A program made the position numbers and the translations under genes. A stretch of 64,000 nt of DNA, taken from positions 124,001-188,000 of IMG/VR virus record IMGVR_UViG_3300046507_000773; one strand, 5' to 3'. The notes under the pieces are model-generated. The model was not told the origin of the DNA and searched no databases. It saw only the letters and a list, made by a program, of their open reading frames with translations. Each line of letters begins with the position of its first letter. Position 1 is the first letter of the stretch. Positions 248 to 58,204 of the stretch are shown here, piece after piece.

Positions 248-288
248 GCAGCATAATGGCCCTCCCGTCCTGGGAGGGCTTTATGCCG
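248..288. terminator. Hairpin flanked by GCAGCATAA / TTTATGCCG (first copy of a recurrent element)
   Basis: GC-rich stem GCCCTCCC/GGGAGGGC at 259-279, with TTTATGCCG at 280-288. Confidence 0.7.
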
Positions 289-302
289 TAGTTTCAAAAA
301 GT

Positions 303-326
303 TTTTAACGACATATCACGAAGGTG
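303..326 (+). promoter_or_regulatory. Putative early (virion RNAP) promoter, ACATATYAC class
   Basis: TTTTAACG-ACATATCAC-GAAG-GTG. The same motif precedes PhuZ, DNA polymerase, chimallin and nvRNAP genes and resembles the phiKZ early TATATTAC consensus. Confidence 0.6.
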
Positions 327-409
327 TCAATGGTATTGGCATTAAGTGATTTTCTTACAGAATACTCTTTTAGTTATAGCCCTTTCCCCCAACCTCCTTA
401 GGAGACTAG

Positions 410-1069
410 ATGAACAAGAATACCGGCGTTGTGATGCAATTCGCAGGCGCCAAATATGACCTGGCGAAACTGATGGCCTTGCTGGGTACTTGCCCCAAGG
501 TGAAGATCAATGAACTGGAACTGAACGGTCCAGCCAAAGACGAGAAGCAAGCGAACGATCCTGTGTTCGCTGCCAACCGTCAAGACCAGATCGTGACCTA
601 CCATGGCCAGCCTGCTGAATACCCGCAGTGCGTGATCCTCGTGAAGCAGCACGGCAAGTACACCGTCCTCTACGGTGACTCGATCCGTGACGCTGTCGAA
701 GAAGCTTACCTCGTGACCTCGCACACCCTCAAGAAGGTGCGTTACGAGCAAAGCCAACCGGCAACGGCTGAACGTGTCCTGACCTCGACTACCACCGGCC
801 AAATGGCGGACAAGTTCCAGGCAGCGTTTCGCGGCAGCCGTGAGCCGGTTTCGGTCAAGGTGCAAAACGCCGGCGTATCGGGTGCGCATGTCGGTCGCGA
901 CTGGGCAGGCCATCATCGTGCACAGCAAGATACGTTGACGAGCCAGGTCCGTGGTGAGAAGATCGAGAAGAACACGACCTTCGGCCGCCATGGTTCGGCA
1001 AGTGACGTCCAGCGTGGTACGCACAAGTCGCCCCAGTATCACAGCGGTGCTCGTCGCCGCGAGCAATAA
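410..1069 (+). CDS. Hypothetical protein (219 aa) with a low-complexity basic C-terminal half
   Basis: AGGAG RBS upstream of ATG 410; coding-like codon bias. Confidence 0.8.
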   Translation: MNKNTGVVMQFAGAKYDLAKLMALLGTCPKVKINELELNGPAKDEKQANDPVFAANRQDQIVTYHGQPAEYPQCVILVKQHGKYTVLYGDSIRDAVEEAYLVTSHTLKKVRYEQSQPATAERVLTSTTTGQMADKFQAAFRGSREPVSVKVQNAGVSGAHVGRDWAGHHRAQQDTLTSQVRGEKIEKNTTFGRHGSASDVQRGTHKSPQYHSGARRREQ

Positions 1070-1214
1070 GTCAATCTGTGGTTTTTTAACAGAAGACTAA
1101 CAAAGCTATGTACAGAATCGATGAGCGCAGTCTGAGCCCATCAAAGCAATTACCGCGATTGCTCTTGCAGTAATCAGACAAACCAACCTCTTTAACAACC
1201 TGAAGGAAAAAGTA

Positions 1215-1736
1215 ATGGCAACCGCAACCGAAAAAGACGTCCTGAAAGCTGAAGCGAAAAAGACCTTCGACGACCTGTCGCCGGAAGTCAAGAAGACCGT
1301 CGAAGCTGCCCGCGGCTACGTCACCATCTCGAACGAAGGCACCCCGGCCGTCGACCCCGCCACCTACGAGCGCCTGCTGGAACTGAACAACTCGAGCAAG
1401 GAAGCCTACATCGGCGTCCAGGAAGCCAATGCCGTCATCTACCCGGCACTGGCCTACGTGTTCGGCGAAAAGGGCATCCCGGTCATGGCCGAGAACGCTG
1501 ACGTCAAGCAGATCACCGGCGTCGTCCCGTGCTTCGGCAAGGACACGATCTCGGTCGGCCTGAAGCGTTCGTCGCCGTACACCCTGCGCGATTCCGAAGG
1601 CACCGTCACCGGCACCGGCACGAGCTTCGGCACCATCAGCGTCGACCACAAGATCTACGCCACCAAGACCCGCGGCGAACTGGCCAAGGTGAAGAACCTG
1701 ATCGGCGAACTCGGCGCAGCTAGCCTGTCGTCGTAA
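1215..1736 (+). CDS. Hypothetical protein (173 aa), probably highly expressed
   Basis: AAGGA RBS; extreme C-ending codon bias like the structural and chimallin genes. Confidence 0.85.
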   Translation: MATATEKDVLKAEAKKTFDDLSPEVKKTVEAARGYVTISNEGTPAVDPATYERLLELNNSSKEAYIGVQEANAVIYPALAYVFGEKGIPVMAENADVKQITGVVPCFGKDTISVGLKRSSPYTLRDSEGTVTGTGTSFGTISVDHKIYATKTRGELAKVKNLIGELGAASLSS

Positions 1737-2018
1737 AGCATCGGCGCGCGTCGCCGTAGGGAGCTAGCTTCCCCTGTAGCTGCTTGACGTCCGTGCCTTT
1801 GTGCGAGAGTGACGTGGCTGCTCAAATCTTGCCCCCATCGTGGAGCGTGTAAAAGTTAGGAAGCCGTCCGATGGCCGGTTCCCGTAAAGGAAGTTAGCTT
1901 CTCCTGATATCGCCAGCGCTTAGCCTTTGTGCGAAGAAGCGCTTGCGGGGCAAAGACCACAAGGTCAAAGTTAGGGTCTGGGTGACAACGCCCGGACCCG
2001 CCCCTATTTTTTATGCCG
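1737..2018 (+). ncRNA. Candidate structured RNA made of two tandem related units plus a terminator
   Basis: No credible ORF. Duplicated blocks GGA(A)GYTAGCTTCYCCTG, GCCTTTGTGCGA and AAAGTTAGG. The segment ends in a hairpin followed by T-run and TATGCCG. Confidence 0.5.
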
Positions 2019-7443: not shown

Positions 7444-7493
7444 GCAGCATAAATGCCCTACCCTTCCTTTCGGAGGGGTAGGGCTGTATGCCC
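7444..7493. terminator. Bidirectional hairpin with GCAGCATA / TATGCCC arms
   Basis: GC stem GCCCTACCC...GGGTAGGGC between convergent genes. Confidence 0.7.
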
Positions 7494-10470: not shown

Positions 10471-10684
10471 GTCTTTGTCCTGTCACTGTGATAAATGGTA
10501 TGGTTTCTGAGGCGATGCCGTGCATCATACTAATTAAAAAATTACTGCGAGTCTAATACACCGCACGAAATCTCGTCGGTTAAGAAAATATGGGCTAGCC
10601 AGTATTTTATTTAACATAGAATGACAGGTAACGTTTCCCACGTTTCTCACATTACGCTGATCGTCGTATCAATAGGACACGAAC

Positions 10685-16009: not shown

Positions 16010-18271
16010 ATGATTCTTTTTGCCGAAGACTGGAAGCTTTACCCAACAGCATTTCCGGACATGCAGACGAAGAACCGCTCCTTCGTTCGTCTTGCACAAG
16101 TGTACAAGGCAATGGGTGTCAAGAACCACATGTTCATTTTGGCTCTTGTCAATCCTGCGCTACAAGGAGTCGATCCGTTTGATTTGGAAAATCTGACGGA
16201 AGAACAAAAGGTGGCGATCGGTGTGGAGTGCAGCATTAACCCGTGGTACTTCTTCCGCGAAGTGGCCAGGGCACCAGCTGAATCCGGTAGTGCTTCGGTG
16301 CCGCTCCAAGCGAACCGCGGTAACATCGCGCTTTTCTGGACGTTCTTTAACCACATCCTGATCTTCCTGATTCAGATTCGCCAAACCGGTAAATCGTTCA
16401 GTACAGATACCTTGATGACGTTGCTGCTGAACTTCATCTGTCGCGATACCAAGATCAACCTTCTCACGAAGGACGACGATCTGAGGCGTAAGAACATTCA
16501 GCGATTGAAAGACATTGCTGAAGAACTCCCCTTGTACCTGCAACAAAAGACAAGGGCTGACGCGAACAACGGTGAAGAGATTTCGATTAAGAGTCTTGGT
16601 AACTGGTACAACACGCACGTGCCGCAAGAATCGGAAAAACGTGCACTGCTGATGGGTCGTGGTCTGACTTCGGCAATCTTCCACATTGACGAGGCCCCGT
16701 TCCAAAAGAACATCCGCATCGCATTGAAAGCAGCACTGCCTGCAGCCGGTGCAGCGCGTGATTCGGCTCGTGCAGCCGGTTCGCCTTACGGTACCATCAT
16801 TACGACCACGGCTGGTAAGATCGACGACAAGGATGGCTCGTACATCTACAACTTGATCATGGCAGCAGCGGTCTGGGATGAGAAATTCCTGGATGCCAAG
16901 AACCTGGCAGACTTGGAACTCATGGTTCGTGCCAATTCGCGTGGTGGTAAGCTCTACATCAACGCCACGTTCAACCATCGTCAACTGGGTAAGTCGGACG
17001 ACTGGCTGGCTCAACGTCTTGAAGATGCACTGCAAGACGACGATAGCGACGGACAAGATACGAACCGAGACTTCTTCAACATGTGGACGTCTGGTAGTCT
17101 TTTGAACCCACTTGACCCGAAGGTACTGGAAGCCATCGGTAAGAGCGCTATGGGCCCTCTGTACACGTCTATCAGCCGTCCTATGGCCTACCTGACTCGC
17201 TGGTACATTCCGGAGCATGAGATCGGTCCTCGTCTGGCCCGTAGTAAGTTCGTTCTGGGCTTTGACGGTAGTAACGGCTCCGGTGGTGACGATCTGACCC
17301 TCGTGCTTCAAGACCTGGAAAGCCTGGAAGTTATTGCGGCAGGTTCGTACAACGAACTAAACCTGATTCACTTCTCGAAGTGGATTGCCGAGATGCTGAT
17401 CAACATGCCCAACGTCACGTTCAATCCAGAGAACAAATCGTCGGGTACGTACATCATCGACTACTTGCTCGTGGAATTGGTGGCTGCTGGTATTGACCCG
17501 TTCAAGCGGATCTTCAATACCGTGGTCGACGAATGGCAAGAAAAGCCTGACCGGTTTGCGGAAATCAACATGCCGATGAACCGCCGGGAAAAGAACATCT
17601 ACGAGAAGTACAAATCCTCGTTTGGCTTTACCACGGCAGCAACGGGTAAATTCAGTCGTGGCGACTTGTATTCCATCATCTTGCAGCGCGCTGCTCGGGA
17701 TGGCAAGCACGTGGTTCGTGATAAGCAGTTGACCGGGCAGATCTTGGCGCTGGTTAATCGCAATGGCCGTATTGACCACCCGATCGGTGGACACGACGAC
17801 ATGGTGGTTGCATGGCTCCTGTGCAACTGGTTTGCGATGATGGCCAAGAACATGAGCTTCTACGGCATCGATAGCCGTCAGGTGATGCGTTTGGTTGTGA
17901 AGGAAACCTTTGGTCGTCAGCTGGACCAGTTCGAGCAACTCGAACAGCAAAAGCTGCGCGAGCGGATGGATGAACTCACTGCTGAACTGTCGGACGAAAA
18001 GGATGATGCGGTCTCGTTAAAGCTTGAGCGCGAGATGCGCATGATCGAGCGTAAGCTCGTCATGGACAAAGGGGAAGTGTTGAACGTTGACGAACTGATC
18101 CGCCAGGCTCAGGAGAAGAAGCGTGGCAACAAACCTTGGAACCGTGGCGTAACTCCAGCAGCAGCCTATGGTGCATCGCTCTTTAGGCAGCCCCAGGTCA
18201 ACATGAACAACCTCACACATGGGGTCATGAGTGATCGGGTTCTGTCCTTGAAAGAGATCATGGGAAGGTAA
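16010..18271 (+). CDS. terL: Terminase large subunit
   Basis: Walker A IRQTGKS, Walker B FHIDE, RNase H-like LGFDGS and GGHDDMV nuclease motifs. Confidence 0.92.
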   Translation: MILFAEDWKLYPTAFPDMQTKNRSFVRLAQVYKAMGVKNHMFILALVNPALQGVDPFDLENLTEEQKVAIGVECSINPWYFFREVARAPAESGSASVPLQANRGNIALFWTFFNHILIFLIQIRQTGKSFSTDTLMTLLLNFICRDTKINLLTKDDDLRRKNIQRLKDIAEELPLYLQQKTRADANNGEEISIKSLGNWYNTHVPQESEKRALLMGRGLTSAIFHIDEAPFQKNIRIALKAALPAAGAARDSARAAGSPYGTIITTTAGKIDDKDGSYIYNLIMAAAVWDEKFLDAKNLADLELMVRANSRGGKLYINATFNHRQLGKSDDWLAQRLEDALQDDDSDGQDTNRDFFNMWTSGSLLNPLDPKVLEAIGKSAMGPLYTSISRPMAYLTRWYIPEHEIGPRLARSKFVLGFDGSNGSGGDDLTLVLQDLESLEVIAAGSYNELNLIHFSKWIAEMLINMPNVTFNPENKSSGTYIIDYLLVELVAAGIDPFKRIFNTVVDEWQEKPDRFAEINMPMNRREKNIYEKYKSSFGFTTAATGKFSRGDLYSIILQRAARDGKHVVRDKQLTGQILALVNRNGRIDHPIGGHDDMVVAWLLCNWFAMMAKNMSFYGIDSRQVMRLVVKETFGRQLDQFEQLEQQKLRERMDELTAELSDEKDDAVSLKLEREMRMIERKLVMDKGEVLNVDELIRQAQEKKRGNKPWNRGVTPAAAYGASLFRQPQVNMNNLTHGVMSDRVLSLKEIMGR

Positions 18272-18312
18272 GCAGCATAATGGCCCCTCCTTTTGGGAGG
18301 GGCTTTATGCCG
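18272..18312. terminator. Bidirectional hairpin with GCAGCATAA / TTTATGCCG arms
   Basis: Near-identical to the element at 248-288; lies between convergent genes. Confidence 0.75.
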
Positions 18313-18709
18313 GAGTAATGGGCATCGAGTCTAGCCTACTGGCGAGGAGATCCAGGTAGGCTAAGATGGCTGCGTCCTTCTGTCCTTCATCATCAACGAA
18401 AGGCGATAGCTGACAAGGAATGTCGACGTCCAGTTCGCAAGCTTCTTTGAGCCTATCAGGAGCGTCATTGGTGACCACGGAGAAGACACGATAGACCACC
18501 ATGCTTTTGTCGCGGACGAACCAATTATCGTACTTACGTTTGTACTGCTTCTTCTGGCAGTAGATTCTAACTTCATAGCCAGACACAGCAAATCCCACAA
18601 GATGACCCAAGGCATTCTTCGGTAGCTTAACCTCGTGCAGTGTTTTCTTCCCTTTGAGTTTCTCCAGGAAGAGGAACACTACACTTAGCATGCGCTTGAG
18701 TGATTGCAT
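18305..18709 (-). CDS. Hypothetical protein (134 aa)
   Basis: AAGGGA RBS on the minus strand; follows 18732..20015. Confidence 0.6.
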   Translation of the reverse strand: MQSLKRMLSVVFLFLEKLKGKKTLHEVKLPKNALGHLVGFAVSGYEVRIYCQKKQYKRKYDNWFVRDKSMVVYRVFSVVTNDAPDRLKEACELDVDIPCQLSPFVDDEGQKDAAILAYLDLLASRLDSMPITPA

Positions 18710-18731
18710 GGTGGTATCCCTTAGGGATGGA

Positions 18732-20015
18732 TCACACCGCCTTGACGTAATGCTTCATCGTGACAGCACACAGGACGATGTACAGAAGCACCCCGGTACG
18801 AACTGCTGCTTGTTGAGACTGGTTACGCGAACCGGTCGCTTTGAGGACAATGCTCTCCACATCTTTACGCAGCTTGAGCACCGTCGGGTTCGTCGTACGA
18901 GACGACGTGTAGACACCACGGAGGCGGGCAAGGAGCGTTGGCAAGTCAGCGTGGGTGCTGACCAAGTCACGGTTCTCTCGTTCGGACATGTACTGGAAGC
19001 TATGCACGAGGGATTCGTGAATGATTTCCTTCAAGAGTTCGCTACCACGTTCATGGTAGTTATTCGAGAAGTATTCAAGCGTCTGGGTAAAGAGACGCGG
19101 GGACATGGTCTCGTTCATCTTCTCGATGACATTCACCAGGTCATGCTTGATGAACGAATTACGGTCGGAAATGATGCCGGTGACATAGTTCTCGTACTGG
19201 TACAGATTGCTCGTCCTATCCCGCAGGATTTGCTCACCGTCGAATTCCACGACGGAAGAGGTCGTCACAATCTTGTTACCGCTGTGGTGCACTTCCATGA
19301 GCACAGCGTAAATCTCTTTCACGATACCGCGGATACGGCCCTGGATGTCGTTCAGCATGTCCATCACTCGGTCATCCGTGCCTGGCACGTTGTTGTCCGT
19401 GTAATTGGTCCATGGCTTCAAACGGTCCATGCCGGTAATCACGTCGGCCCAGATACTATCTTTGGCGAGGACGGATTCAGTGCGGTAGTTAAAGAGGTTC
19501 TTCCACGTACCTTGCTGCTTGATGAGGAAGCGCTCGGAGAGCATCGCGTACGTCGTTTCTGCCGTGTCTTTGTCAGCCGGGAAACGGAAGTACTGGTGCA
19601 TGAGGCTCGTGAAGAACTTGTACTGCAAGACGAGGAGCACATCCATCATGGCCTGATGCTTGATCTCGTCTGGGAGTTTCGATTTGAAGATCTTGTGCGT
19701 CAAGTAGATGCACGAGAGGTTCATGGTGTCGGAGGCGACGATCTTGTGCTTCGGATCGATAATCGGCAAACGACGAAGGTGGTTTTCGAGGGGACCATCA
19801 TCGACCTGGACGATCTCGTTGAACCAACGATCGCGATCAGCAGGCATAAACTTTACTACGTGGACACCCAAGAGATGGCCACCAAAGAACTCGATGTGAT
19901 CGCGATTCTTCGTGATAAATGCAACCTGGTATTGATGCAGTGCTTTCGCGAGCTTTGCATCGACTTCCAATTCCTTGCATTCCTCTTCGAAGACTTGAAA
20001 GATTGTTTCAGTCAT
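18732..20015 (-). CDS. Conserved virion protein (phiKZ gp32-like)
   Basis: 427 aa. The FFGGHLLGVH segment and RLRGVYTSSR resemble a chimallivirus core protein that lies near the terminase. Confidence 0.65.
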   Translation of the reverse strand: MTETIFQVFEEECKELEVDAKLAKALHQYQVAFITKNRDHIEFFGGHLLGVHVVKFMPADRDRWFNEIVQVDDGPLENHLRRLPIIDPKHKIVASDTMNLSCIYLTHKIFKSKLPDEIKHQAMMDVLLVLQYKFFTSLMHQYFRFPADKDTAETTYAMLSERFLIKQQGTWKNLFNYRTESVLAKDSIWADVITGMDRLKPWTNYTDNNVPGTDDRVMDMLNDIQGRIRGIVKEIYAVLMEVHHSGNKIVTTSSVVEFDGEQILRDRTSNLYQYENYVTGIISDRNSFIKHDLVNVIEKMNETMSPRLFTQTLEYFSNNYHERGSELLKEIIHESLVHSFQYMSERENRDLVSTHADLPTLLARLRGVYTSSRTTNPTVLKLRKDVESIVLKATGSRNQSQQAAVRTGVLLYIVLCAVTMKHYVKAV

Positions 20016-20108
20016 TGGGTTTTCTCATGGGAGGAATCTTACACACAGGATGAGGTGGAAAATTTACATATCGGGCATACTGGGCCAGCACGTAGCTGGC
20101 CCGATGAA

Positions 20109-20633
20109 TCAGATGTAACGATCCATTGCGTATGCTTCCAGACTCGGGTAAATCTTCACGTTGTGATGACGTGCGATCGATTCGAGAGCGGTGGCCAGTG
20201 CCGACGGGGTCATGTCGACGAATGCTTCCGGATTGTCGCCGTTGCCAGCTTGTGCTTTGGCAGTGGTGGTGTCGATCACCAGGGCGTAGTTCGGCATGTC
20301 GTCCGGGTCTTGGTTGACCATGTCGGTGGTGACAGCGATCACGTCTTCCGGCGTCACGTTGTCCGAGGACACTGCGTAGACAGTCGGGTTGACTGCCGAT
20401 GCAGGATCGAATTCTTGTTGCAAGGCGCGGGCCAGTGCTTGCATTGCCAGGGCGTCGTTGGCTTGGCTTTCGGTAGCCACGTTGCCATCCTGGTTTGCAG
20501 TATCCTGGTCTTTCGAATAGATCTGCTGCAGGGATTGGGTGAAGGCATCCGAGAGCGGACCTTTGATGACAACGGGTTCATCTTTCAGGTCAGCGTCTTC
20601 GAGTGCACGACGAAGAGTAGTCAGTCGGCTCAT
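20109..20633 (-). CDS. Acidic hypothetical, probably virion protein (174 aa)
   Basis: AAGGA RBS; downstream hairpin followed by GTATGCCCG on the minus strand. Confidence 0.7.
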   Translation of the reverse strand: MSRLTTLRRALEDADLKDEPVVIKGPLSDAFTQSLQQIYSKDQDTANQDGNVATESQANDALAMQALARALQQEFDPASAVNPTVYAVSSDNVTPEDVIAVTTDMVNQDPDDMPNYALVIDTTTAKAQAGNGDNPEAFVDMTPSALATALESIARHHNVKIYPSLEAYAMDRYI

Positions 20634-20821
20634 AAAGCGTCCTTAGTTGGTGAATGGGTAGTGGAGTCACATAATTGGGTACATGAGTACTTAAAGTAAA
20701 AAAATACAGCTGAGGTTACTCTATGTACCTGACTGGCTGTCACGGTGCCAGAGCCTCAAAGAGTGCCTGCGAAGCAGGGGGCCTATTTCATTTAATTAAT
20801 AAAGAGTATAAAGAGTAGTAT

Positions 20822-20933
20822 AGAACCAAAGGGTATTCTGACGAGCAGACAAGCTCGTCATTGAACGAACTCTTGGAAGGATAGACCAAACACGAAAGCA
20901 GCCCTGTACACCCAGTACAGGGCGTTTATGCCG
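20822..20933 (+). ncRNA. Candidate ~110-nt small RNA
   Basis: No ORF. Perfect 8-bp hairpin at 20839-20860; plus-strand terminator at 20901-20933 with no plus-strand gene upstream. Confidence 0.35.
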
Positions 20934-20960
20934 GAGTAGTCAAAAACACGATTCCAAGAA

Positions 20961-20986
20961 ATTACAACAACATATTCTTCCCGTGA
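20961..20986 (+). promoter_or_regulatory. Putative early promoter variant
   Basis: ATTACAACA-ACATATTCT-TCCC-GTGAG upstream of 21034. Confidence 0.45.
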
Positions 20987-21033
20987 GATTCCACCAATCT
21001 CTTTTCTTTAACCTTCCAATGAATGGAAAACCA

Positions 21034-21636
21034 ATGAATACTCGTAACACTGAAGTCGCTTTCATCGAGCGCGAGATTGCCCTGGCTATGAGCCAGCTTT
21101 ATCCGGGTAAGGATTTCACCAACTTCAAGATCCTTGCCATCGGTGACTACTGTGCCGGAACGGTCAGGGTAGAACGAAAGCCGAATCAAGTTATTGTGAG
21201 CGCCGCCGATGAAAAAGGCCGCTACGTCGGTGGAGCTGAGATTTACAAGCTGCGCCTTTCTGGTCCGAGCAGCGACAAGGAAGACGAACGCATGAGTGCA
21301 CACATGGCAAGTGGTCGAATGCATCACATCGTCGATGAACAATCGAACGATATCGACAAAGCTGGTGCTGCACTCAACCTGGCTCCGGAAGAGCTGGCTG
21401 CATTCAAGGCAGCATCCCAGGCGCTGCTGACGGACTTCGTATCTGAGGACGTCGCTCGCACTCGTCCGTTCACCATCGTGAGAACGTCGGTCGACCAGGA
21501 ACGCTACAAGATCGAGATGGGCTTTACCAAAGAAATGCTGGACACCAAGTCCGCAAAGATTGAAGAGAAGCTCGGTGAAAACAATTCGCTGCGGATCGTC
21601 TACATCCTGCCGAACGTGATCGCCCCGCTGAAGTAA
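21034..21636 (+). CDS. Hypothetical protein, tandem paralog A
   Basis: C-terminus EMGFTKEMLD...RIVYILP aligns with that of the next gene. The start may be 21019. Confidence 0.75.
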   Translation: MNTRNTEVAFIEREIALAMSQLYPGKDFTNFKILAIGDYCAGTVRVERKPNQVIVSAADEKGRYVGGAEIYKLRLSGPSSDKEDERMSAHMASGRMHHIVDEQSNDIDKAGAALNLAPEELAAFKAASQALLTDFVSEDVARTRPFTIVRTSVDQERYKIEMGFTKEMLDTKSAKIEEKLGENNSLRIVYILPNVIAPLK

Positions 21637-21686
21637 TCCCGCAATACCAAATACAACCCCTTTACAAAAAGAAAGCGAACCGAATT

Positions 21687-22346: not shown

Positions 22347-22409
22347 TCCATCTTCAAGTGCCCGGCTTAAGTGCCGGGCTTTATGACCCCTATTTTTCGA
22401 GAGAACATC

Positions 22410-23111: not shown

Positions 23112-23172
23112 CATCGCAATACTGGGCCGGGTAACACCGGCCTTTCTTTTTTCTGTATTAGGAGAGCCAACA

Positions 23173-25507: not shown

Positions 25508-25508
25508 T

Positions 25509-25563
25509 CCGGCATAAACGGGGAGAGCCCAAAAGGCTCCCCCGCGTATGCTGCTTTTTTTTT
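25509..25563. terminator. Bidirectional hairpin with CCGGCATA / TATGCTGC arms
   Basis: Lies between convergent genes; T-run follows. Confidence 0.75.
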
Positions 25564-27849: not shown

Positions 27850-28237
27850 TCGTCCTGGCTTTCAGAATTGTATATTCGGCAAATCCGATATCAAAATTTC
27901 CTGAAATGTTTCCCCATGGATATGAAGTGATACATTCGCTTCGCACAAAAGTGCCTCTTTTTAAAGAGGACGGCGTTCGTGACGGCAAGATCAAAAGGTA
28001 GCGAGTGGGTTCTGGATCGCAAGCATGCGGTCGCCAATAGAATGCCATGAGTACGTGAGTAGTGAGCCTAGTCGCACAGTGAGCCTGAAACCCCCTGACC
28101 GATGTGGCCCCCTTGTTGAAAGGTGTGGTTGCATTCCTCAAGCCGATGTGGAGCTATCGGCGAAGTAGGCGGCAGGGGGGTTTCCCTATACTACCTCTGG
28201 TTAGAGCAGGTATAGGGAAGCCTTCTTTTTTATGCCG
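27850..28237 (+). ncRNA. Candidate structured non-coding RNA
   Basis: About 390 nt with no credible ORF. GAAACCCCCTG / CAGGGGGGTTTC long-range stem, repeated CCGATGTGG, and a terminal hairpin followed by TATGCCG. Confidence 0.45.
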
Positions 28238-31879: not shown

Positions 31880-32155
31880 AAGGGATTGGCAGTCCCGGCT
31901 CGCCTAATTCGATGTTTGTTTTAGGAATCCCCTTGGACCGCAGGGGAAAATGCTAGATGAAATGATTGTAACCGTCGGAAGCGCCTGCTAAGCGCTTTGT
32001 GGGGTGGTGCTTGCATTGAGTGCTCTCTTTGGAGATCGCGCTTTGATCAACAAGGATCGAAGCACCTTTGTAAGTTCCATATCGACGAATCAGTCTGGAC
32101 ATCTGTACCAGGTCATTTTGAGGGGGGCTTCGGCTCCCCTCTTTTTTTTATGCCG
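31880..32155 (+). ncRNA. Candidate structured non-coding RNA
   Basis: Stems AAGCGC/GCGCTT (31979-31997) and GGTGCTT/AAGCACC (32006-32066); ends in a UUCG-loop terminator followed by TATGCCG. Confidence 0.4.
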
Positions 32156-32557: not shown

Positions 32558-32663
32558 CATATTGGGGAGCATTTAGCTCCCCGTTTATGCCGCCAATGTA
32601 GTATCGATTTAAAAAAACCCACCCTCCCAATGTTATAGCCCTAACAGCAGAGGAGTCGTAAGA

Positions 32664-34844: not shown

Positions 34845-34949
34845 TCAGTAGTACGCCTAGAAATCCATTCTGGGCAAGGAGAGAGCTATTCTTTGAGTAG
34901 CTCTCTCCCCATCTATGCCGTACTTGTCCAAAACTAAACGAGGTCTACC

Positions 34950-35453
34950 ATGTCTCACATTGTCCTGGGTGAAGAACACATTGAAGTGCTCTATCTGCTC
35001 TTGAATGATGAGCACGATGCAAAGTTCTACTTCCCCCACTATCGTGCCACCTGTATCGAACTTGCTAACGCAGGTTACATGCTGGTTGAGAATCGCCGCA
35101 CAAAAGAAGAAATGATCAAGATCACTCCCGATGGTCTTCGCGCTTTCTGTCGGCATTTCGATACCAACAACGTAATGCATGCCCTCAAGAAGAAGGTGCA
35201 TCAAAAGCCTTACAGCTACGAGCATTACGACTTACTGCACAAACTGATCACCAAGAATCCGATTGCAGCAACAGATATCGACAAGCTCATCATCGCATTT
35301 GACTTGGTCAATGGCGGCTGGGCTAAGACAATCTTCACCACGAGTGGCGCCATCTACTACACCAGTACCCATCAAGGGCACCTGGCGTTCTGTCAACACT
35401 ACTCGGAGTACTCGCTTGTTCCAGCTGAAGAGAAACACCGGCTTGCAGCATAA
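34950..35453 (+). CDS. Putative tandem winged-helix protein
   Basis: Two ~60-aa repeats ending ITPDGLRAF and STHQGHLAF. Confidence 0.5.
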   Translation: MSHIVLGEEHIEVLYLLLNDEHDAKFYFPHYRATCIELANAGYMLVENRRTKEEMIKITPDGLRAFCRHFDTNNVMHALKKKVHQKPYSYEHYDLLHKLITKNPIAATDIDKLIIAFDLVNGGWAKTIFTTSGAIYYTSTHQGHLAFCQHYSEYSLVPAEEKHRLAA

Positions 35454-35517
35454 CCCGGCATACAACCCTACCCGACTTCAAACGAGGCCGAGTAGGGTTG
35501 TGTCGGGCTTTATGCCG
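35445..35517. terminator. Bidirectional hairpin with doubled GCAGCATA/CGGCATA and TTTATGCCG arms
   Basis: CAACCCTAC...GTAGGGTTG stem between convergent genes. Confidence 0.7.
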
Positions 35518-35908
35518 CCGTATTCATGCCGGCGATCCAGCGCAGCGTCTTCAGCAGGTAACCTTCACGGTCCCATGCTGCGTTGAACGCTTCTTCGAAC
35601 GAGTACTTCTCGCCGAGCTCGGTATTGAACTCGGTGCCTTCGACGGTGTGCGAGAAACCGAAGAACACGGTGCCGTTCATCATGGTCAGGCGGCAGATCA
35701 TGGTGCGACCGTTCGGCTCCATCGAGAACGATTTCTCGGCGATCATGGACTTGAGATAGTCGGGCGTGACTTTCGGTGGCAGTTTGTCCAGCGACAGCAG
35801 GGCGATGTTGGAGACGTTACCGCCCACCATTTCAAAACGCTGTTGGAAAGCAGCGATGCGTTCTTCGCTGCTGGCGCCTGCTACGACTTTCGGATATTGA
35901 TCGGACAT
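35510..35908 (-). CDS. Phage_gp49_66 (PF13876) family protein; Acb4-like cyclic-nucleotide sponge candidate
   Basis: PKVTP..I........T.ICRLTMMNG...G.S......FN.ELG......A...W..EGYLLK matches the N4 gp49/Sf6 gp66 family pattern as recalled. Confidence 0.75.
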   Translation of the reverse strand: MSDQYPKVVAGASSEERIAAFQQRFEMVGGNVSNIALLSLDKLPPKVTPDYLKSMIAEKSFSMEPNGRTMICRLTMMNGTVFFGFSHTVEGTEFNTELGEKYSFEEAFNAAWDREGYLLKTLRWIAGMNTAA

Positions 35909-35916
35909 GTGATTCC

Positions 35917-37011: not shown

Positions 37012-37278
37012 GACGGCTGCCTAGTTATGTTAGAGGGATGTTAGCATAAAATGACAGGGCTTGTTGGGCCAGTCCTTGTCTCTTTATTAGAAGGAGAAAT
37101 AAAAGAAGAGATCAATCGTCCGCCGCATGGGTAGAATTGATCTTGGAATTTTTTACTCACATGCACCTATGGTATAGAACGAGATCTCAAAGTCTTGGGC
37201 TAAACCAAACCGCCGAGTTGAAACATACTTGGCGGGGCGGCGTATAATGCATACCGTGGGTTATGTTGGATTCCAAGA

Positions 37279-37306
37279 TTTTTCAAACCCATATCACGAA
37301 CTTGAA
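37279..37306 (+). promoter_or_regulatory. Putative early promoter of chmA
   Basis: TTTTTCAAAC-CCATATCAC-GAAC-TTG. A second variant, ACATGCAC...GTATAGAAC, lies at 37158-37180. Confidence 0.5.
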
Positions 37307-37380
37307 ATTGTAGTAGCAATGCTTCGATTTCAACATGTTTGCGCAAACATTTATTAATAGAAAAGAAAGGTAACACTATC

Positions 37381-39384
37381 ATGGCCGTACAAGGTAAAGA
37401 CGATCCGAAGAAGAACACCACTGGCTTCGGTTCCAACCAGCAGCAGCAAACCGCCATGGGCGCCAGCTTCGAGCGCGCTCGTGAAAACCAGCAACCCAAC
37501 CAGAACGAAAGCATGAACAACAACTTCGGCTCGAACACCACCGGCAACGACGACGGCATGTGGTCCTTCCTGAACCCGTCCGCAAACGGCCTGTACACCG
37601 TCACCGACACCGCCGCCGGCGAAGCCCTGTCCAAGCTGGACAAGGCCCTGGGCGAGATCTACAAGAGCGCCAACCCGGCGATCCAGATCACCACGCTGCC
37701 GCTGTCGATGGAAGCGAACCAGATGCTGAACATCGACACGCTGGTCGTCATCACCCGCCTGACCAACGTGCCGCAGGCCGGCATCGCCTACCACCCGATC
37801 CTGATCGCTTCCTCGATCCCGAAGATCGAAGACGCAGTCGTCCAGGTCAACGGCGTGAACACCAACGAAACCCGCGTCGAAGGCGACGTGGCTGACGACG
37901 TCTTCCACGAAGCCGTCTTCAACGAAGTGCGCCGCCTGTTCCCGAACGACCAGGTCACCATCACCCTGGGCGAAGTGCTGCCGCGCGTCTTCAACTTCGA
38001 CGACAAGGACGCCGTCCAGAAAGTCGCACGCAATGCCTCGATGGCCGGCGCCGTGACCCTGCAGAAACTGGTGCCGGGCTGGAGCGACCTGAACCTGGCG
38101 AACGTCAAGAAGGACTCGAGCCTGACCCTGCGCTCGAACTACGGCCAGCCGAACGAAAACAACCGCGTCGGCCTGCCGGTCCGCTCGGACGTCGTCGTGT
38201 CCCTGACCGCCGAGCCGCTGAACCAGAACCAAGGCCAGCAGCGCCGTTCGGTCGTGCAGACCCGTTCCCGCGAAGTCTCGCGTGTCCAGGCCTTCGTCGA
38301 TCTGGTCTGGGCGCCGACCACCGGTCCGCGCAATCCGTTCTTCAATGCGCAGATGAACCAGCAGCCGGCATTCGGCCAGCCGGTGCAGCAGACCAACCCG
38401 CACCAGCGTTACATCCCGCGCATCGTCGTGACCGGCCTGTCGACCCAGAACCCGCCGACCACCGCCATGCAGCTGCTGTCGGCCCTGCTGTCGTCGTACA
38501 TCAGCGAAGAAGGTCACTGGGTCCACGCGTTCCAGCCGCGTACCTACCGTTCGGGCTCGAAAGAGATCGACATGCACGACATCGGCGCGCTCGCTATCGA
38601 AGCCAACTTCGAGAACGATCCGTCCGGCCTGGGCCAGCGTGTGGACACCAGCCTGGAAACCTTCCAGCCGATGCTCGCCGATTACCTGGCGGCCATCATC
38701 CGTCCTGACCCGATCATCTCGGTCGACGTCGACGAATGCGGCCCGGACAGCTGGTACAACGGCTTCCTGCCGATGGCAGCTGAAGGTCAACAGGAAGCGC
38801 TGGACGAACTGTTCAACGCATGGAACATCCTGACCAACGGCCGCTTCGCCATCAACTGGGAAAAAGCGCAGTACAACGGCCAGATCTGCACCGACGAGAA
38901 CAACCGCATCCACCTGGGTTACTACCTGGACGCGGAAGGCAACCGTCGCGACCTGCGCGAAATCGACTACCTGGCTGTGCTGAACCGTTTCGGCGGCGGC
39001 ACCGACCACGACATCGTCAAGCGCTGGTCCGACTCGTTCATCGACGGTACCGATCCGCTGCTGAAGCGTCTGGAAAACCGCAAGAAGATCATCGACATGA
39101 TGACGCAGAACACCGCGGTGTACACGGGCTTCGCTCGTCGCATCTCCTTCGCGCACGTCCTGATGCAAGTCGGCGCCAAGTCGGCCAAGGAAGCCGGCCT
39201 GGACTTCCGTACCATCTCGAGCCACGCTCAGCTGAAGACCAACGAACGCGCCTCCGGCAACTTCGACAACCTGATGATGTCGGGCAGCCAGAGCTCGGGC
39301 CTGTTCGGCCGCACCTCGTTCGGTCAAGCGTCGAACAACTTCGGCTCGAACCGTTCGTTCGGCTTCTCGCGCAGCAGCTTCTAA
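37381..39384 (+). CDS. chmA: Chimallin, the major phage nuclear shell protein
   Basis: 667 aa with extreme codon bias, between the gp52-like gene and nvRNAP beta'. Disordered termini, and ENNRIHLGYYLDAEGNRRDLREIDYLAVLN matches the chimallin pattern. Confidence 0.9.
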   Translation: MAVQGKDDPKKNTTGFGSNQQQQTAMGASFERARENQQPNQNESMNNNFGSNTTGNDDGMWSFLNPSANGLYTVTDTAAGEALSKLDKALGEIYKSANPAIQITTLPLSMEANQMLNIDTLVVITRLTNVPQAGIAYHPILIASSIPKIEDAVVQVNGVNTNETRVEGDVADDVFHEAVFNEVRRLFPNDQVTITLGEVLPRVFNFDDKDAVQKVARNASMAGAVTLQKLVPGWSDLNLANVKKDSSLTLRSNYGQPNENNRVGLPVRSDVVVSLTAEPLNQNQGQQRRSVVQTRSREVSRVQAFVDLVWAPTTGPRNPFFNAQMNQQPAFGQPVQQTNPHQRYIPRIVVTGLSTQNPPTTAMQLLSALLSSYISEEGHWVHAFQPRTYRSGSKEIDMHDIGALAIEANFENDPSGLGQRVDTSLETFQPMLADYLAAIIRPDPIISVDVDECGPDSWYNGFLPMAAEGQQEALDELFNAWNILTNGRFAINWEKAQYNGQICTDENNRIHLGYYLDAEGNRRDLREIDYLAVLNRFGGGTDHDIVKRWSDSFIDGTDPLLKRLENRKKIIDMMTQNTAVYTGFARRISFAHVLMQVGAKSAKEAGLDFRTISSHAQLKTNERASGNFDNLMMSGSQSSGLFGRTSFGQASNNFGSNRSFGFSRSSF

Positions 39385-50040: not shown

Positions 50041-50096
50041 CCGGCATAAGCGGCATAAAAGAACCATCCCCGTGTTTGGAGATGGTTCTTTTTTTG
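50041..50096. terminator. Bidirectional terminator preceded by two CGGCATAA copies
   Basis: AAAAGAACCATC...GATGGTTCTTTT stem between convergent genes. Confidence 0.75.
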
Positions 50097-50113
50097 TTTG
50101 TTTAGAAGTTGTG

Positions 50114-56521: not shown

Positions 56522-56573
56522 TGGAGTCCCTCCTTCGGGAGGGGCTTCTTTTATGCCGCAAGGAGAAAAAGAA

Positions 56574-57041
56574 ATGTATCTTACTTACCAACAGCACGTC
56601 GAAGGCTCCAAACACCTGATGCGCACTCTGCCTATTTTGGCAGTGGCTCCAGCGTTCGGTGAGCTTCTCAATACCCTGGGAAGGCTCTGGGAAGTAGACG
56701 AGGACCTTACGCTCGGTGTTCGCCATCTGGAAACGCCTTACGGTTCCCATGGGCGCACGGGCGATCCGTACAGCGTCTTCTATCTGTACGAAGACGAGAA
56801 GGCACCGAATGCCCATCCGCAAGGGCTCGGTCTTCCCTGGGTCAAGATGAGTCGCAACCACGAGGACAAAAGCCCGACGGCAGTTCACATCGAGTACTAC
56901 GTTGGGTCGGACAAGAAGCGTGACGACTACTGCGACTTCCATTCGATCTATCAGAAGGCGTTGGCGGCAGCCCACTTTCTGTTCGAAGGCAAGATCAGCA
57001 TTGACCCCAACGAGTATCAGGAATTTAGCCTGACGCCCTAA
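56574..57041 (+). CDS. Hypothetical protein
   Basis: AAGGAG RBS before ATG 56574. Confidence 0.7.
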   Translation: MYLTYQQHVEGSKHLMRTLPILAVAPAFGELLNTLGRLWEVDEDLTLGVRHLETPYGSHGRTGDPYSVFYLYEDEKAPNAHPQGLGLPWVKMSRNHEDKSPTAVHIEYYVGSDKKRDDYCDFHSIYQKALAAAHFLFEGKISIDPNEYQEFSLTP

Positions 57042-57096
57042 CCCGGCATAAACCCCCAGGCTTATCACCTGGGGGCTCATCTTATTTTTTTTTGTT

Positions 57097-57549
57097 TCAA
57101 TAGTTGTTGCCAGGCTCCAGAACAATCACTTCCATCTCCGTCTCACCCAGATACTCGGTAATGAGAGGACGCACCTCATCCCATTCCAATCCACCTTTGC
57201 CGCAACCAATGGCAGGGATCGCGATGCTTGTAAGGTCATGCTCCTTGTATGTCTCGGCTAATTTCTTCAGTCCCTCTTTAATCCACTTTAGTTGTGAATC
57301 ATGTCCCCAGTAACGCTTTGTGGGAAAGCAGACTATCTTTGTGCCGTACTTTTCCGTAAAGACAAAGTACCCGTCCTTTTCAAAGACACCCGTGTTACAT
57401 GCTTTTTTGTAGGCATCGTATAGACCACCATAGCGATTACGAAACGCAGCAGCCAGGCCATTCCCCATGACGCCGACTGTGTTGACCGGACACACCAAAG
57501 CTTTGGCTTTCGAGAAGAAGATATTCTCGTCTTGATGAAAAGTGATCAT
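57097..57549 (-). CDS. Stand-alone DarG-like macrodomain (ADP-ribosyl hydrolase)
   Basis: ALVCPVNTVGVMGNGLAAAF, FPTKRYW and IAIPAIGCGKGGLEW match the DarG-type macrodomain. Confidence 0.88.
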   Translation of the reverse strand: MITFHQDENIFFSKAKALVCPVNTVGVMGNGLAAAFRNRYGGLYDAYKKACNTGVFEKDGYFVFTEKYGTKIVCFPTKRYWGHDSQLKWIKEGLKKLAETYKEHDLTSIAIPAIGCGKGGLEWDEVRPLITEYLGETEMEVIVLEPGNNY

Positions 57550-57650
57550 AATCCTTCTCTTGTAAGTTCAACTACAAGATGAGGTTCTCCAATATAAACC
57601 ACATAGGAGGCGTAGAACTCCAGGGGGAAAACAACTACCGGGAAACTATC

Positions 57651-58163
57651 ATGGCAATCATCCGACCGACTCGGAAAAACTCAGGAGTGGAAACACTCAT
57701 CAAGATCTTAGCACTACTTACTGATGACATTACGCTCTTTAATGGGCAGATCCTAATGTCGCAGTTTAGCATCGGCTTACTCCAAGCCACCAAGATGAGC
57801 CTTTTCATCGACCCAAGTCCTTTTGCGTACATCGGCCCGAGAAACGTGTGGCTCCAGGACTACAAAGATGGTGTCAGCGTGTATTACGCGAATGAAATAG
57901 AAGCCTGTGAGTTTCTAGGACGACTTGAGCTTAAAATCAGTTTGGAAGAAAGCTTTCCAGAAAAGAATCGCCAGCATTACCGATTGGACGATTTAGATAC
58001 CGCAGCAGAACACATCCGTAACTATCTTCTCATCGGGCTCTACCCAGGGCACAAGATTGAACCACCGACCAATGAGTGGCTCAACAAGTTTATTAAAGCA
58101 CGAGAGTGGGATGTACTGGCCACCTTTGAACCCTCCGACATCGCGCTACTTAAACCAAGATAA
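57651..58163 (+). CDS. Hypothetical protein, AT-richer than its neighbours
   Basis: ORF divergent from the macrodomain gene; the start is uncertain (57579 or 57651). Confidence 0.6.
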   Translation: MAIIRPTRKNSGVETLIKILALLTDDITLFNGQILMSQFSIGLLQATKMSLFIDPSPFAYIGPRNVWLQDYKDGVSVYYANEIEACEFLGRLELKISLEESFPEKNRQHYRLDDLDTAAEHIRNYLLIGLYPGHKIEPPTNEWLNKFIKAREWDVLATFEPSDIALLKPR

Positions 58164-58204
58164 CGGCATACGGCCCCACCCTTTGGGGTGGGGCTTTATG
58201 ACCG
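58164..58204. terminator. Bidirectional hairpin with CGGCATA / TTTATGACCG arms
   Basis: GCCCCACCC-loop-GGGGTGGGGC between convergent genes. Confidence 0.75.

What the first reader, a model, noticed from the sequence alone, without database searches (positions are those of the whole stretch)
248..58204. TATGCCG/TATGCTGC motif attached to the 3' foot of at least 15 gene-end hairpins
Seen: TATGCCG or a close variant follows hairpins at about 282, 2012, 7487, 18306, 20927, 22382 (TATGACC), 28231, 32149, 32586, 34914, 35511, 56552 and 58197 (TATGACC). The reverse complement (CGGCATA or CAGCATA) precedes hairpins at about 249, 7445, 18273, 20073, 25511, 35446, 35457, 50043, 50051, 57044 and 58164. 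At convergent junctions both arms carry it. The arms often mismatch (GCAGCATA versus TATGCCG), some hairpins have only one arm, and several have only 3 U residues. So the motif is kept as sequence, not for pairing. Inference: it may be a phage-RNAP-specific termination signal, an RNA 3'-end processing or export tag (for example for ChmC), or the phiKZ-type late promoter TATG fused to terminators and firing outward.
Basis: partly seen in the sequence, partly recalled or inferred. Interest (0 to 1): 0.65.

Follow-up and report, generated by a model that had tools for sequence, protein, structure and literature searches.

The report
PhiKZ-type terminator hairpins with TTATGCCG tail
The TATGCCG motif attached to gene-end hairpins is real, but it is this uncultured giant phage's version of a conserved transcription-terminator signal already mapped by RNA 3'-end sequencing in phages phiKZ and 201phi2-1, so it is a known kind of element whose mechanism is still open.

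Summary
Observation confirmed. TATGCCG occurs 19 times in the window against 5.3 expected. Genome-wide (226.8-kb phiKZ-like rhizosphere phage) TTATGCCG is the top non-homopolymer intergenic word. All but two intergenic copies sit on a GC-rich hairpin, usually 0-3 nt after its foot.

The element matches the conserved phiKZ terminator motif (stem-loop + YTTATKYYGT) defined from ONT-cappable-seq 3' ends (Putzeys 2024). 201phi2-1 has the same motif. I found the hairpin-TTATG signature in phiKZ, RP12, FLC9 and RSL2. It is absent from the unrelated jumbo phage RSL1 and from AR9.

Junction statistics favour a transcript-end signal over a promoter:
- Convergent gene junctions: 18 of 23 carry it, mostly on both strands.
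- Divergent junctions: 5 of 23.
- The same contrast holds in three other genomes.

Free-standing TATGT, the likely true promoter, shows the opposite distribution.

The tails average only 3.25 T in 8 nt and escape a standard U-tract scan. The two arms are never fully complementary (0 of 93 two-armed units), so sequence is conserved, not pairing.

Verdict: a new member of a known kind. The open idea is that the phage RNA polymerase's TATG-binding pocket reads the tail as a pause or termination signal. No RNA data exist for this phage.

The parts
249..288 (.). Two-armed unit at a tandem (+ +) junction: CAGCATAA, hairpin 258-280, TT-TATGCCG (282-288). The reverse arm TATGCTG is at 249-255 (-).
   Evidence: It matches the published phiKZ half-pattern with 0 mismatches.
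1974..2018 (+). One-armed unit: hairpin 1974-1999, a 12-nt T-rich spacer, then TATGCCG at 2012-2018. It lies about 25 nt upstream of the next + gene.
7445..7493 (.). Two-armed unit at a convergent junction: TATGCTG (-) 7445-7451, hairpin 7455-7484, TATGCCC (+) 7487-7493.
18273..18312 (.). Two-armed unit at the convergent junction after the terminase large subunit gene: TATGCTG (-) 18273-18279, hairpin 18282-18304, TATGCCG (+) 18306-18312.
   Evidence: The orthologous junction in FLC9 and RP12 keeps the flanks but has different stems.
20073..20102 (-). One-armed unit on the - strand after a - gene: hairpin 20082-20102, TATGCCC 20073-20079.
20897..20933 (+). Hairpin 20897-20926 plus TATGCCG 20927-20933, inside a divergent gap. 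It lies about 200 nt downstream of a free TATGTAC and about 90 nt upstream of the + gene. Likely a 5'UTR terminator or attenuator.
   Evidence: 5'UTR terminators are described for phiKZ and 201phi2-1.
22360..22388 (+). One-armed variant: hairpin 22360-22379, TT-TATGACC 22382-22388. Tandem junction.
25510..25553 (.). Two-armed unit at a convergent junction: TATGCCG (-) 25510-25516, hairpin 25519-25544, TATGCTG (+) 25547-25553 followed by a T8 run.
28187..28237 (+). Weak hairpin, then a T5 run, then TATGCCG 28231-28237. The region is poorly annotated and holds small ORFs.
32120..32155 (+). Hairpin 32120-32141 with a canonical T7-8 tract running into TATGCCG 32149-32155. It combines a U-tract tail with the motif tail.
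32564..32592 (+). One-armed unit: hairpin 32564-32582, GTT-TATGCCG 32586-32592. It lies 78 nt upstream of the DNA polymerase gene.
   Evidence: A ~96% identical relative (run X5) shows indels in the loop only.
34873..34920 (+). One-armed unit right after the DNA polymerase gene: hairpin 34873-34910, spacer ATC (no U-tract), TATGCCG 34914-34920.
35445..35517 (.). Two-armed unit at a convergent junction with a doubled left arm: TATGCTGC 35445-35452 (-), TATGCCG 35456-35462 (-), hairpin ~35463-35507, TATGCCG 35511-35517 (+).
50042..50105 (.). Convergent junction. On the - strand, hairpin 50058-50091 is followed by two tandem TATGCCG copies (50051-50057 and 50042-50048). On the + strand the same hairpin is followed by a T-rich tract.
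56523..56558 (+). One-armed unit after the helicase-like gene: hairpin 56523-56548, TTT-TATGCCG 56552-56558. It lies about 28 nt upstream of the next start codon.
57044..57095 (.). Convergent junction. TATGCCG 57044-57050 (-) follows hairpin 57051-57077. The + side has a T-rich tail.
58164..58203 (.). Two-armed unit at a convergent junction: TATGCCG (-) 58164-58170, hairpin 58172-58195, TATGACC (+) 58197-58203.

Best explanation
The hairpin plus (T)TTATGCYG units are the transcription terminators of a phiKZ-like (chimallivirus-type) jumbo phage. They are the same conserved module described in phiKZ and 201phi2-1.

A GC-rich RNA stem-loop (median -18.7 kcal/mol) forms behind the polymerase. It is followed 0-3 nt later by a short, A-interrupted U-rich stretch (UUAU) and a G/C-rich block (GCYG) in place of a long U-tract. 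Transcripts end there. At convergent junctions the unit is built two-armed (CRGCATAA - hairpin - TTATGCYG) so that it works in both directions. In tandem arrays the sense side carries TATGCCG.

Shown here: the anatomy, the statistics, the lineage distribution, and identity with the published motif.

Taken from the literature: RNA 3' ends map to this motif in phiKZ and 201phi2-1, and such terminators work in vivo.

Inferred: the tail acts as a pause and release signal. The UAU|G step fits the Y(-1)G(+1) elemental pause of multisubunit RNAPs (my own knowledge: Vvedenskaya 2014, Larson 2014). The GC block may resist forward translocation. The exact 3' end is unknown for this phage.
For: Match to the published motif.
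- The phiKZ terminator consensus is BCCYCCCCHWWDGGGRRGGBYTTATKYYGT, from 61 terminator regions defined by ONT-cappable-seq TTS.
- 201phi2-1 motif A resembles it. A co-occurring motif B lengthens the hairpin. Eight terminators were validated in vivo.
- Our consensus is GG[GC]c[TC][TG]TATGC[CT]G.
- The published half-pattern hits the window 6 times against 0.54 expected.

Lineage.
- The phage has split RNAP beta subunits, a tail sheath and a terminase of phiKZ type.
- It has a homologue of phiKZ gp123.
- TATG follows hairpin feet in 15-28% of cases in ours, RP12, FLC9 and phiKZ, and in 9.9% in RSL2, against 0.7-3.4% of random windows. In RSL1 the figures are 1.1 vs 1.0%, and in AR9 3.9 vs 3.6%.

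Position.
- Convergent junctions: 18 of 23 carry it, 14 on both strands. Divergent junctions: 5 of 23 (Fisher p = 3e-4).
- The contrast is replicated in RP12 (p = 0.004), FLC9 (2e-5) and phiKZ (5e-8).
- A same-strand stop codon lies 30 nt or less upstream of the hairpin for 37 of 60 copies, median 13 nt.

Conservation of sequence with changing stems: at the terminase-end junction in ours, FLC9 and RP12 the stems are unrelated but the CAGCATAA/GGGCATA and TATGCCG/TATGACG flanks are kept.

No matching Rfam family exists.
Against: - No RNA data exist for this phage. All public runs that hold it are DNA or unknown contigs, so termination at these sites is inferred by homology of the element, not observed.
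- About a third of copies at tandem junctions face antisense to both neighbours: 10 antisense-only and 6 two-armed, against 22 sense-only. A pure 'end of the upstream gene' role does not explain this unless antisense transcription is common.
- Several sense copies sit only 24-36 nt before the next start codon, with no room for another promoter. This is as expected for a terminator-promoter cassette or for leaky termination.
- The most conserved letters, TATG, equal the nvRNAP late-promoter core. A plain intrinsic-terminator model does not predict that.
Confidence: 0.8

Rival explanations
1. Coupled terminator-promoter. The TATG of the tail is also a working nvRNAP (late or middle) promoter, with +1 at the G. 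Transcription stops at the hairpin and restarts 0-6 nt later for the next gene, the reader's 'firing outward' idea.
For: [quoted passage not shown] This phage has a gp123 homologue.
- At tandem junctions the sense arm is TATGCCG 15:2 and the antisense arm is TATGCTG 7:1 (Fisher p = 5e-4), so the arms are directional.
- Several sense copies lie 24-36 nt before an SD and start codon.
- One copy (20927) sits in a divergent gap pointing at a gene.
Against: - Copies concentrate at convergent junctions, where they would fire antisense into gene 3' ends, and are rare at divergent junctions, where promoters must exist. This holds in four genomes.
- All but two intergenic TATGCYG copies are hairpin-attached, so there is no stand-alone promoter population.
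- Hairpin-less TATG upstream of genes is mostly TATGT (21 of 42). It is found 18 times in divergent gaps and 0 times in convergent gaps, and it resembles phiKZ P119L (TATGTAG), which has no hairpin.
- The phiKZ and 201phi2-1 papers mapped both TSS and TTS and do not report start sites on the terminator motif. This is absence of mention only.
Confidence: 0.12
2. RNA-level tag. The conserved flank is kept in the mature RNA and is read by an RNA-binding protein or nuclease. Possible roles are 3'-end processing, protection from exonucleases, or export from the phage nucleus (for example by ChmC).
For: - Sequence is conserved while pairing is not: 0 of 93 two-armed units are fully complementary.
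- The 5' arm CAGCAUAA lies within the sense transcript right after the stop codon, typically as TAA-NN-CRGCATAA.
- ONT 3' ends cannot by themselves separate termination from processing.
Against: - The best-conserved letters beyond UAU (GCYG) lie at or beyond the expected release point of a hairpin terminator.
- 201phi2-1 units of this class terminate transcription in uninfected Pseudomonas with no phage protein present.
- One-armed units, which are the majority, lack the 5' arm.
- Nothing here tests protein binding.
Confidence: 0.05
3. DNA-level repeat. The units are a REP/MITE-like palindromic element, or the binding site of a DNA-binding protein (replication, packaging, nucleoid organisation), that merely accumulates in intergenic DNA.
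For: Many units share near-identical stems of the GCCCCACCC...GGGTGGGGC type. Conserved short flanks beside an imperfect palindrome recall REP elements (my own knowledge).
Against: - Stems differ completely at orthologous junctions while the flanks stay.
- The same flank is kept across phages whose terminases are only 40-57% identical, and across 37-56% GC.
- Placement is tied to gene ends and orientation.
- RNA 3' ends map to the motif in phiKZ and 201phi2-1.
Confidence: 0.03

Closest known systems
Conserved phiKZ terminator motif (Putzeys et al. 2024, microLife, PMC10914365)
   Same: A GC-rich C-run/G-run stem-loop is followed by YTTATKYYG. It sits at gene ends and works bidirectionally between convergent genes. 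It is the dominant terminator class of the phage. My own scan of phiKZ gives TTATG[TC][TC]gT after hairpin feet.
   Different: The tail here is GC-shifted and tighter (TATGC[CT]G rather than TATG-Y-Y-K-T). The host and clade differ: a rhizosphere phage nearest to Burkholderia FLC9 and Ralstonia RP12. No RNA 3'-end data exist here.
201phi2-1 terminator motifs A and B (PMC11512511)
   Same: Motif A resembles the phiKZ motif. A second motif co-occurs with it and lengthens the hairpin, which matches the two-armed CRGCATAA...TTATGCYG units here. There are 15 bidirectional terminators, and units were validated in vivo.
   Different: The authors read the second motif as stem elongation. Here the arms are never perfectly complementary beyond CATA/TATG, and the antisense arm has its own consensus, TATGCTG.
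phiKZ nvRNAP late promoter 5'-TATG-3' (Ceyssens 2014; Yakunina 2015, PMC4666361; PMC12809450)
   Same: It has the same four letters. It is read as non-template single strand in a pocket of gp123, and gp123 has a homologue in this genome.
   Different: P119L has no upstream hairpin and continues TATGTAG. The hairpin-attached copies continue GCYG and sit where promoters are not needed.
Canonical bacterial intrinsic (Rho-independent) terminator
   Same: A stable GC hairpin is followed by a U-rich stretch. Bidirectional versions carry an A-rich 5' flank.
   Different: The U-tract is cut to about 3 U and interrupted by A (mean 3.25 T in 8 nt). Only 12% pass a usual U-tract rule, and a standard scan misses them. 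A fixed G/C block follows.
Sequence-specific pause/termination signals of phage RNAPs (T7 class II signal ATCTGTT; my own knowledge)
   Same: A conserved primary sequence, rather than structure alone, specifies the stop for a phage polymerase.
   Different: T7 RNAP is a single-subunit enzyme and its class II signal needs no hairpin. Here a hairpin is always present and the polymerases are multisubunit.

Membership tests
phiKZ-type conserved terminator module | GC-rich stem-loop immediately followed by YTTATKYY(G) | tested here: met
   Consensus is GG[GC]c[TC][TG]TATGC[CT]G, with a spacer of 0-3 nt in 50 of 60 copies. The published half-pattern matches 6 times in the window against 0.54 expected, once with 0 mismatches.
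phiKZ-type conserved terminator module | Stem of C-run / G-run type (CCYCCCC ... GGGRRGG) | tested here: met
   Many stems are GCCCCACCC/GGGTGGGGC, GCCCTCCC/GGGAGGGC or GCCCCGCCC/GGGCGGGGC. Others have different GC-rich stems.
phiKZ-type conserved terminator module | Located at the 3' ends of genes; bidirectional between convergent genes | tested here: met
   18 of 23 convergent junctions against 5 of 23 divergent junctions. The stop codon lies 30 nt or less upstream for 37 of 60 copies. Replicated in RP12, FLC9 and phiKZ. Gene calls are my own crude ones.
phiKZ-type conserved terminator module | Carried by a phage with phiKZ-like virion and non-virion multisubunit RNAPs | tested here: met
   PHROG RNAP beta-subunit families 2987 and 3015, and phiKZ-type sheath and terminase. 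gp123 homologue at E = 3e-77. Absent from the non-phiKZ-like phage RSL1.
phiKZ-type conserved terminator module | RNA 3' ends map to the motif (TTS) | not testable with these tools
   No RNA run holds this phage. Only DNA or unknown contigs were found.
phiKZ nvRNAP late promoter | TATG with transcription starting at the G, upstream of late genes | tested here: inconclusive
   The TATG letters are present, but placement is wrong for a promoter: enriched at convergent junctions and depleted at divergent ones. 5' ends cannot be mapped here.
phiKZ nvRNAP late promoter | Stands alone, with no requirement for an upstream hairpin, as in P119L | tested here: not met
   All but two intergenic TATGCYG copies are hairpin-attached. 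P119L has no hairpin.
Canonical intrinsic terminator | U-tract of about 5 or more U within 8 nt after the stem | tested here: not met
   Mean is 3.25 T and 12% pass. The standard scan finds only the 32120 unit in 17000-36999.
REP / MITE-like repeat | Copies related by descent (shared stem sequence), placement independent of gene orientation | tested here: not met
   Stems are unrelated at orthologous junctions. Placement depends on orientation.

The most novel reading that the evidence does not exclude
The terminator tail re-uses the promoter word. The non-virion RNA polymerase keeps its sigma-like subunit and its gp123 pocket during elongation. That pocket captures non-template TATG in the same register as at a promoter (G = next template position). 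This stalls the enzyme 3-6 nt after the hairpin, so a very short U-stretch is enough for release. In a weaker form, the same capture lets the unit act as a stop-and-restart cassette at tandem junctions.

Predictions: 3' ends fall exactly at the U before the G, and the tail's effect depends on the polymerase.

Indirect support:
- The tail is TTATG in all five phiKZ-like genomes tested.
- In AR9, whose nvRNAP reads a different promoter, the tail is TTATT.
- In RSL1 there is no tail signal at all.

No paper found tests termination by nvRNAP.
Probability: 0.2. Interest if true: 0.65.

Novelty: new member of a known kind. Interest (0 to 1): 0.3.

Why it matters
On its own this is annotation-level. 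It shows that the phiKZ-type terminator module extends to an uncultured, GC-rich soil lineage, and it gives a cheap sequence rule (hairpin + TTATGCYG) for marking transcript ends in such genomes, where standard U-tract predictors fail.

Three points go beyond the published descriptions:
- The hairpin-TTATG signature is present in all five phiKZ-like genomes tested, spanning several genera, and absent from two control jumbo phages.
- The two arms are never fully complementary, so the flank is read as sequence.
- Its core equals the nvRNAP promoter word.

Together these make a concrete, testable question about how non-canonical multisubunit phage polymerases terminate.

Tried and rejected
1. Near-identical phage records: none found. 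The nearest annotated kin have only 55-57% TerL identity.
2. RNA evidence: no RNA run holds the phage. Laying four runs gave DNA or unknown contigs only, so no ends could be read.
3. Rfam: no family matches in the window.
4. The enriched intergenic word CTAGGA/CCTAG as a possible promoter: rejected. It sits 8-15 nt before start codons as part of the ribosome-binding region.
5. Supplementary TSS/TTS tables of the phiKZ and 201phi2-1 papers are not held, and Ceyssens 2014 is not held. I therefore could not check whether any mapped late TSS coincides with a terminator TATG.
6. 'Arms conserved for pairing': rejected. One-armed units keep the same sequence, and two-armed units always carry a mismatch at +5 to +7.
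7. The sense/antisense variant rule (CCG sense, CTG antisense) is clear here and partly in FLC9, but not in RP12 or phiKZ. I do not claim it as general.
8. My first RNAfold-only hairpin filter was too lax in a 54% GC genome. It was replaced by stricter stem criteria.
9. The large protein searches, structure prediction and complex prediction were not needed and were not used.

Full report
WHAT THE WINDOW IS

The window is bases 124001-188000 of a single 226,810-bp contig with 53.6% GC. Its large ORFs hit PHROG families for a phiKZ-type tail sheath, a terminase large subunit, a DNA polymerase, a helicase and two split 'RNA polymerase beta subunit' families. A full-length homologue of phiKZ gp123 lies elsewhere on the contig (29% identity, E = 3e-77). 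gp123 is the beta-like subunit of the non-virion RNA polymerase.

No near-identical phage record is held. By terminase, the nearest annotated relatives are Burkholderia phage FLC9 (57.6%) and Ralstonia phages RP12 and RP31 (54.9%). phiKZ-like phages of Xanthomonas, Erwinia and Ralstonia (RSL2) are further away. Public runs that hold the sequence are rhizosphere metagenomes, and none is on record as RNA. This is therefore an uncultured phiKZ-like jumbo phage.

TATGCCG occurs 19 times in the window against 5.3 expected, and TATGCTGC 5 times against 1.2. Each sits directly after a GC-rich hairpin of about -12 to -26 kcal/mol. Three copies (6097, 24188, 24362) are inside genes and look like chance.

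Genome-wide, an unbiased word count puts TTATGCCG and its sub-words at the top of all non-homopolymer intergenic words. Of 50 TATGCCG copies, 41 lie in the ~13% of the genome that is non-coding.

Of the 81 exact TATGCYG copies, the 15 hairpin-less ones inside genes fit chance. Of the intergenic ones, all but two are attached to a hairpin.

For the 60 clearly hairpin-attached copies:
- The spacer between stem foot and TATG is 0-3 nt in 50.
- The median hairpin energy is -18.7 kcal/mol.
- The first 8 nt after the stem hold on average only 3.25 T.
- Only 12% would pass a '5 T in 8' rule.

In line with this, a standard hairpin+U-tract scan of 17000-36999 picks up only the unit at 32120, which happens to have a T-run in front of the motif.

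WHAT IT IS

The literature search gave a direct match. ONT-cappable-seq of phiKZ located 133 terminator regions. Of these, 61 share the motif BCCYCCCCHWWDGGGRRGGBYTTATKYYGT, a stem-loop followed by TTAT, with a MEME E-value of 1.7e-212 (PMC10914365).

In 201phi2-1, 132 termination sites were mapped (PMC11512511):
- The main motif (n = 59) 'strongly resembles' the phiKZ one.
- A second motif co-occurs with it and lengthens the hairpin.
- 15 terminators are bidirectional.
- Eight terminators were functional in a terminator trap in uninfected Pseudomonas.

The units here, for example GGGAGGGC-TT-TATGCCG at 272-288, fit the published pattern. Its 3' half matches the window 6 times against 0.54 expected, once without any mismatch.

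I then checked the published claim and its reach directly. I fetched whole genomes and looked at what follows the feet of GC-rich stems.

| Genome | Type | TATG within 0-6 nt of a hairpin foot | Random windows |
|---|---|---|---|
| This phage | phiKZ-like | 17.5% | 0.7% |
| RP12 | phiKZ-like | 17.9% | 1.2% |
| FLC9 | phiKZ-like | 15.0% | 0.8% |
| phiKZ | phiKZ-like | 27.7% | 3.3% |
| RSL2 | phiKZ-like | 9.9% | 1.3% |
| RSL1 | jumbo, not phiKZ-like, same host genus, 58% GC | 1.1% | 1.0% |
| AR9 | two multisubunit RNAPs, different late promoter | 3.9% | 3.6% |

TTATG, TATGC and TATGT are the most enriched flank words in the phiKZ-like genomes. AR9 tails are of the TTATT type.

The consensus drifts with lineage:
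- This phage and RP12: TATGC[CT]G.
- FLC9: TATG[CA]C[GC].
- phiKZ: TATG[TC][TC]gT.

At the orthologous junction after the terminase gene, this phage, FLC9 and RP12 have unrelated stems. All three keep the CAGCATAA/GGGCATA flank on one side and TATGCCG/TATGACG on the other.

TERMINATOR OR PROMOTER?

TATG with +1 at the G is the late promoter of the phiKZ non-virion polymerase. It is bound as non-template single strand by gp123 (PMC4666361, PMC12809450).

Gene-junction statistics separate the two readings. I used my own crude gene calls (249 genes, 91% coding).

| Junction type | Carry the hairpin motif | Detail |
|---|---|---|
| Convergent | 18 of 23 | 14 on both strands |
| Divergent | 5 of 23 | only one or two convincing |
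| Tandem | 38 of 202 | 22 sense-only, 10 antisense-only, 6 both |

For convergent against divergent junctions, Fisher p = 3e-4. With a uniform pipeline the same contrast holds in RP12 (18/24 vs 8/25), FLC9 (14/22 vs 1/23) and phiKZ (20/22 vs 2/21; p = 5e-8).

Promoters are required in divergent gaps and useless in convergent ones. Terminators are the reverse.

A second population behaves like a promoter. Hairpin-less TATG in sense orientation within 200 nt of a start codon is followed by T in 21 of 42 cases. Free TATGT occurs 18 times in divergent gaps and never in convergent gaps. One example at window 26480 (TATGTAG) resembles phiKZ P119L, which itself has no upstream hairpin.

The one good divergent-gap unit (20897-20933) lies about 200 nt downstream of such a free TATGT and about 90 nt before the gene. 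It looks like a 5'UTR terminator of the kind reported for phiKZ and 201phi2-1.

WHAT THE PLAIN TERMINATOR READING DOES NOT EXPLAIN

First, the flank is kept as sequence. One-armed units, the majority, carry the same letters as two-armed ones. In two-armed units the arms never match beyond CATA/TATG. Across four genomes, 0 of 93 have identical +5..+7 letters on both strands, against 13.9 expected (no permutation gave fewer than 4). Here the usual pair is TATGCCG with TATGCTG, or with TATGACC/G.

Second, at tandem junctions of this phage the sense arm is TATGCCG (15:2) and the antisense arm is TATGCTG (7:1; p = 5e-4). This rule is not seen in RP12 or phiKZ.

Third, antisense-facing copies are common. 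They sit as TAA-NN-CRGCATAA directly after the stop codon, often opposite a normal U-tract. The phiKZ paper also reports 9% antisense terminators.

Fourth, some tails are doubled 9-10 nt apart (35445/35456 and 50042/50051).

Fifth, the core of the tail is the promoter word.

HOW IT MOST LIKELY WORKS

Shown or taken from the literature: the units mark transcript 3' ends in related phages, and they stop even the host RNAP.

Inferred: the hairpin does the main work. The UUAU stretch gives a weak hybrid. The U|G step fits the Y(-1)G(+1) elemental pause of multisubunit polymerases (my own knowledge). The GCYG block may hinder forward translocation.

The more novel possibility, at about 0.2, is that the nvRNAP pocket that reads TATG at promoters also captures it during elongation and so sets the stop. 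This could allow a restart at tandem junctions. I found no paper that tests termination by nvRNAP.

LIMITS

- Gene calls are home-made, and some small ORFs are doubtful.
- No transcript ends can be read for this phage.
- The published TSS/TTS tables were not available to me.
- A ~96% identical relative in run X5 keeps the stem and motif of the 32564-32592 unit while its loop carries indels. The difference list was truncated, so I draw no statistics from it.

VERDICT

The element is a new member of a known kind. Interest is modest (0.3), with a testable mechanistic question attached.

Noticed in passing
window 26480, 1107, 10499-10618, 20673-20724, 37262; genome-wide list: Hairpin-less TATGT(A/T/G) sites in sense orientation upstream of genes. 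They occur 18 times in divergent gaps and never in convergent gaps. Window 26480 (TATGTAG) resembles phiKZ late promoter P119L. They are candidate nvRNAP promoters of this phage.
   Followed up: partly
genome-wide; e.g. window 44707, 37020, G000 37848, 38366: The word CTAGGA/CCTAG is strongly enriched between genes (21 of 23 TCCTAG copies). It sits 8-15 nt before start codons (CTAGGAAAG...ATG). It looks like part of the ribosome-binding region, often overlapping the upstream stop codon, and not like a promoter.
   Followed up: partly
two-armed units, e.g. window 249-288, 18273-18312, 25510-25553, 58164-58203: The two arms are never identical at +5..+7: 0 of 93 units in four genomes against 13.9 expected. 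A mismatch is always kept just beyond the CATA/TATG pairing. At tandem junctions of this phage the sense arm is TATGCCG and the antisense arm is TATGCTG. The reason is unknown.
   Followed up: partly
window 35445/35456 (-), 50042/50051 (-); G000 48632/48641, 91567/91576, 96585/96594: Motif tails are doubled on the same side of one hairpin, 9-10 nt apart (about one helical turn).
   Followed up: no
window 20897-20933: A hairpin plus TATGCCG lies inside a 385-nt divergent gap, about 200 nt after a free TATGTAC and about 90 nt before the + gene. It is possibly a 5'UTR attenuator or the end of a small RNA, as described for phiKZ and 201phi2-1.
   Followed up: partly
window 27537-28700, 30195-30534 and 31818-32663: These stretches have weak coding signal under the genome's codon model. 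They hold only small ORFs (for example 28301-28762, 30198-30629, 32004-32557). Several terminator units (28231, 32149, 32586) lie among them. They may be atypical small genes or non-coding transcripts.
   Followed up: no
window 32001-38000 (runs X1-X5): The phage or close strains occur in several rhizosphere metagenomes from different studies. Run X5 holds a ~96% identical relative whose contigs break near the hairpin units at 34853/34889 and 35376/35770.
   Followed up: partly
AR9 genome (L078-L090): In AR9, hairpin feet are followed by TTATT/TTTTA-type tails. These share 'TTAT' with the phiKZ group but lack the G. AR9's nvRNAP uses a different promoter word. AR9's low GC (28%) is a confounder.
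   Followed up: partly
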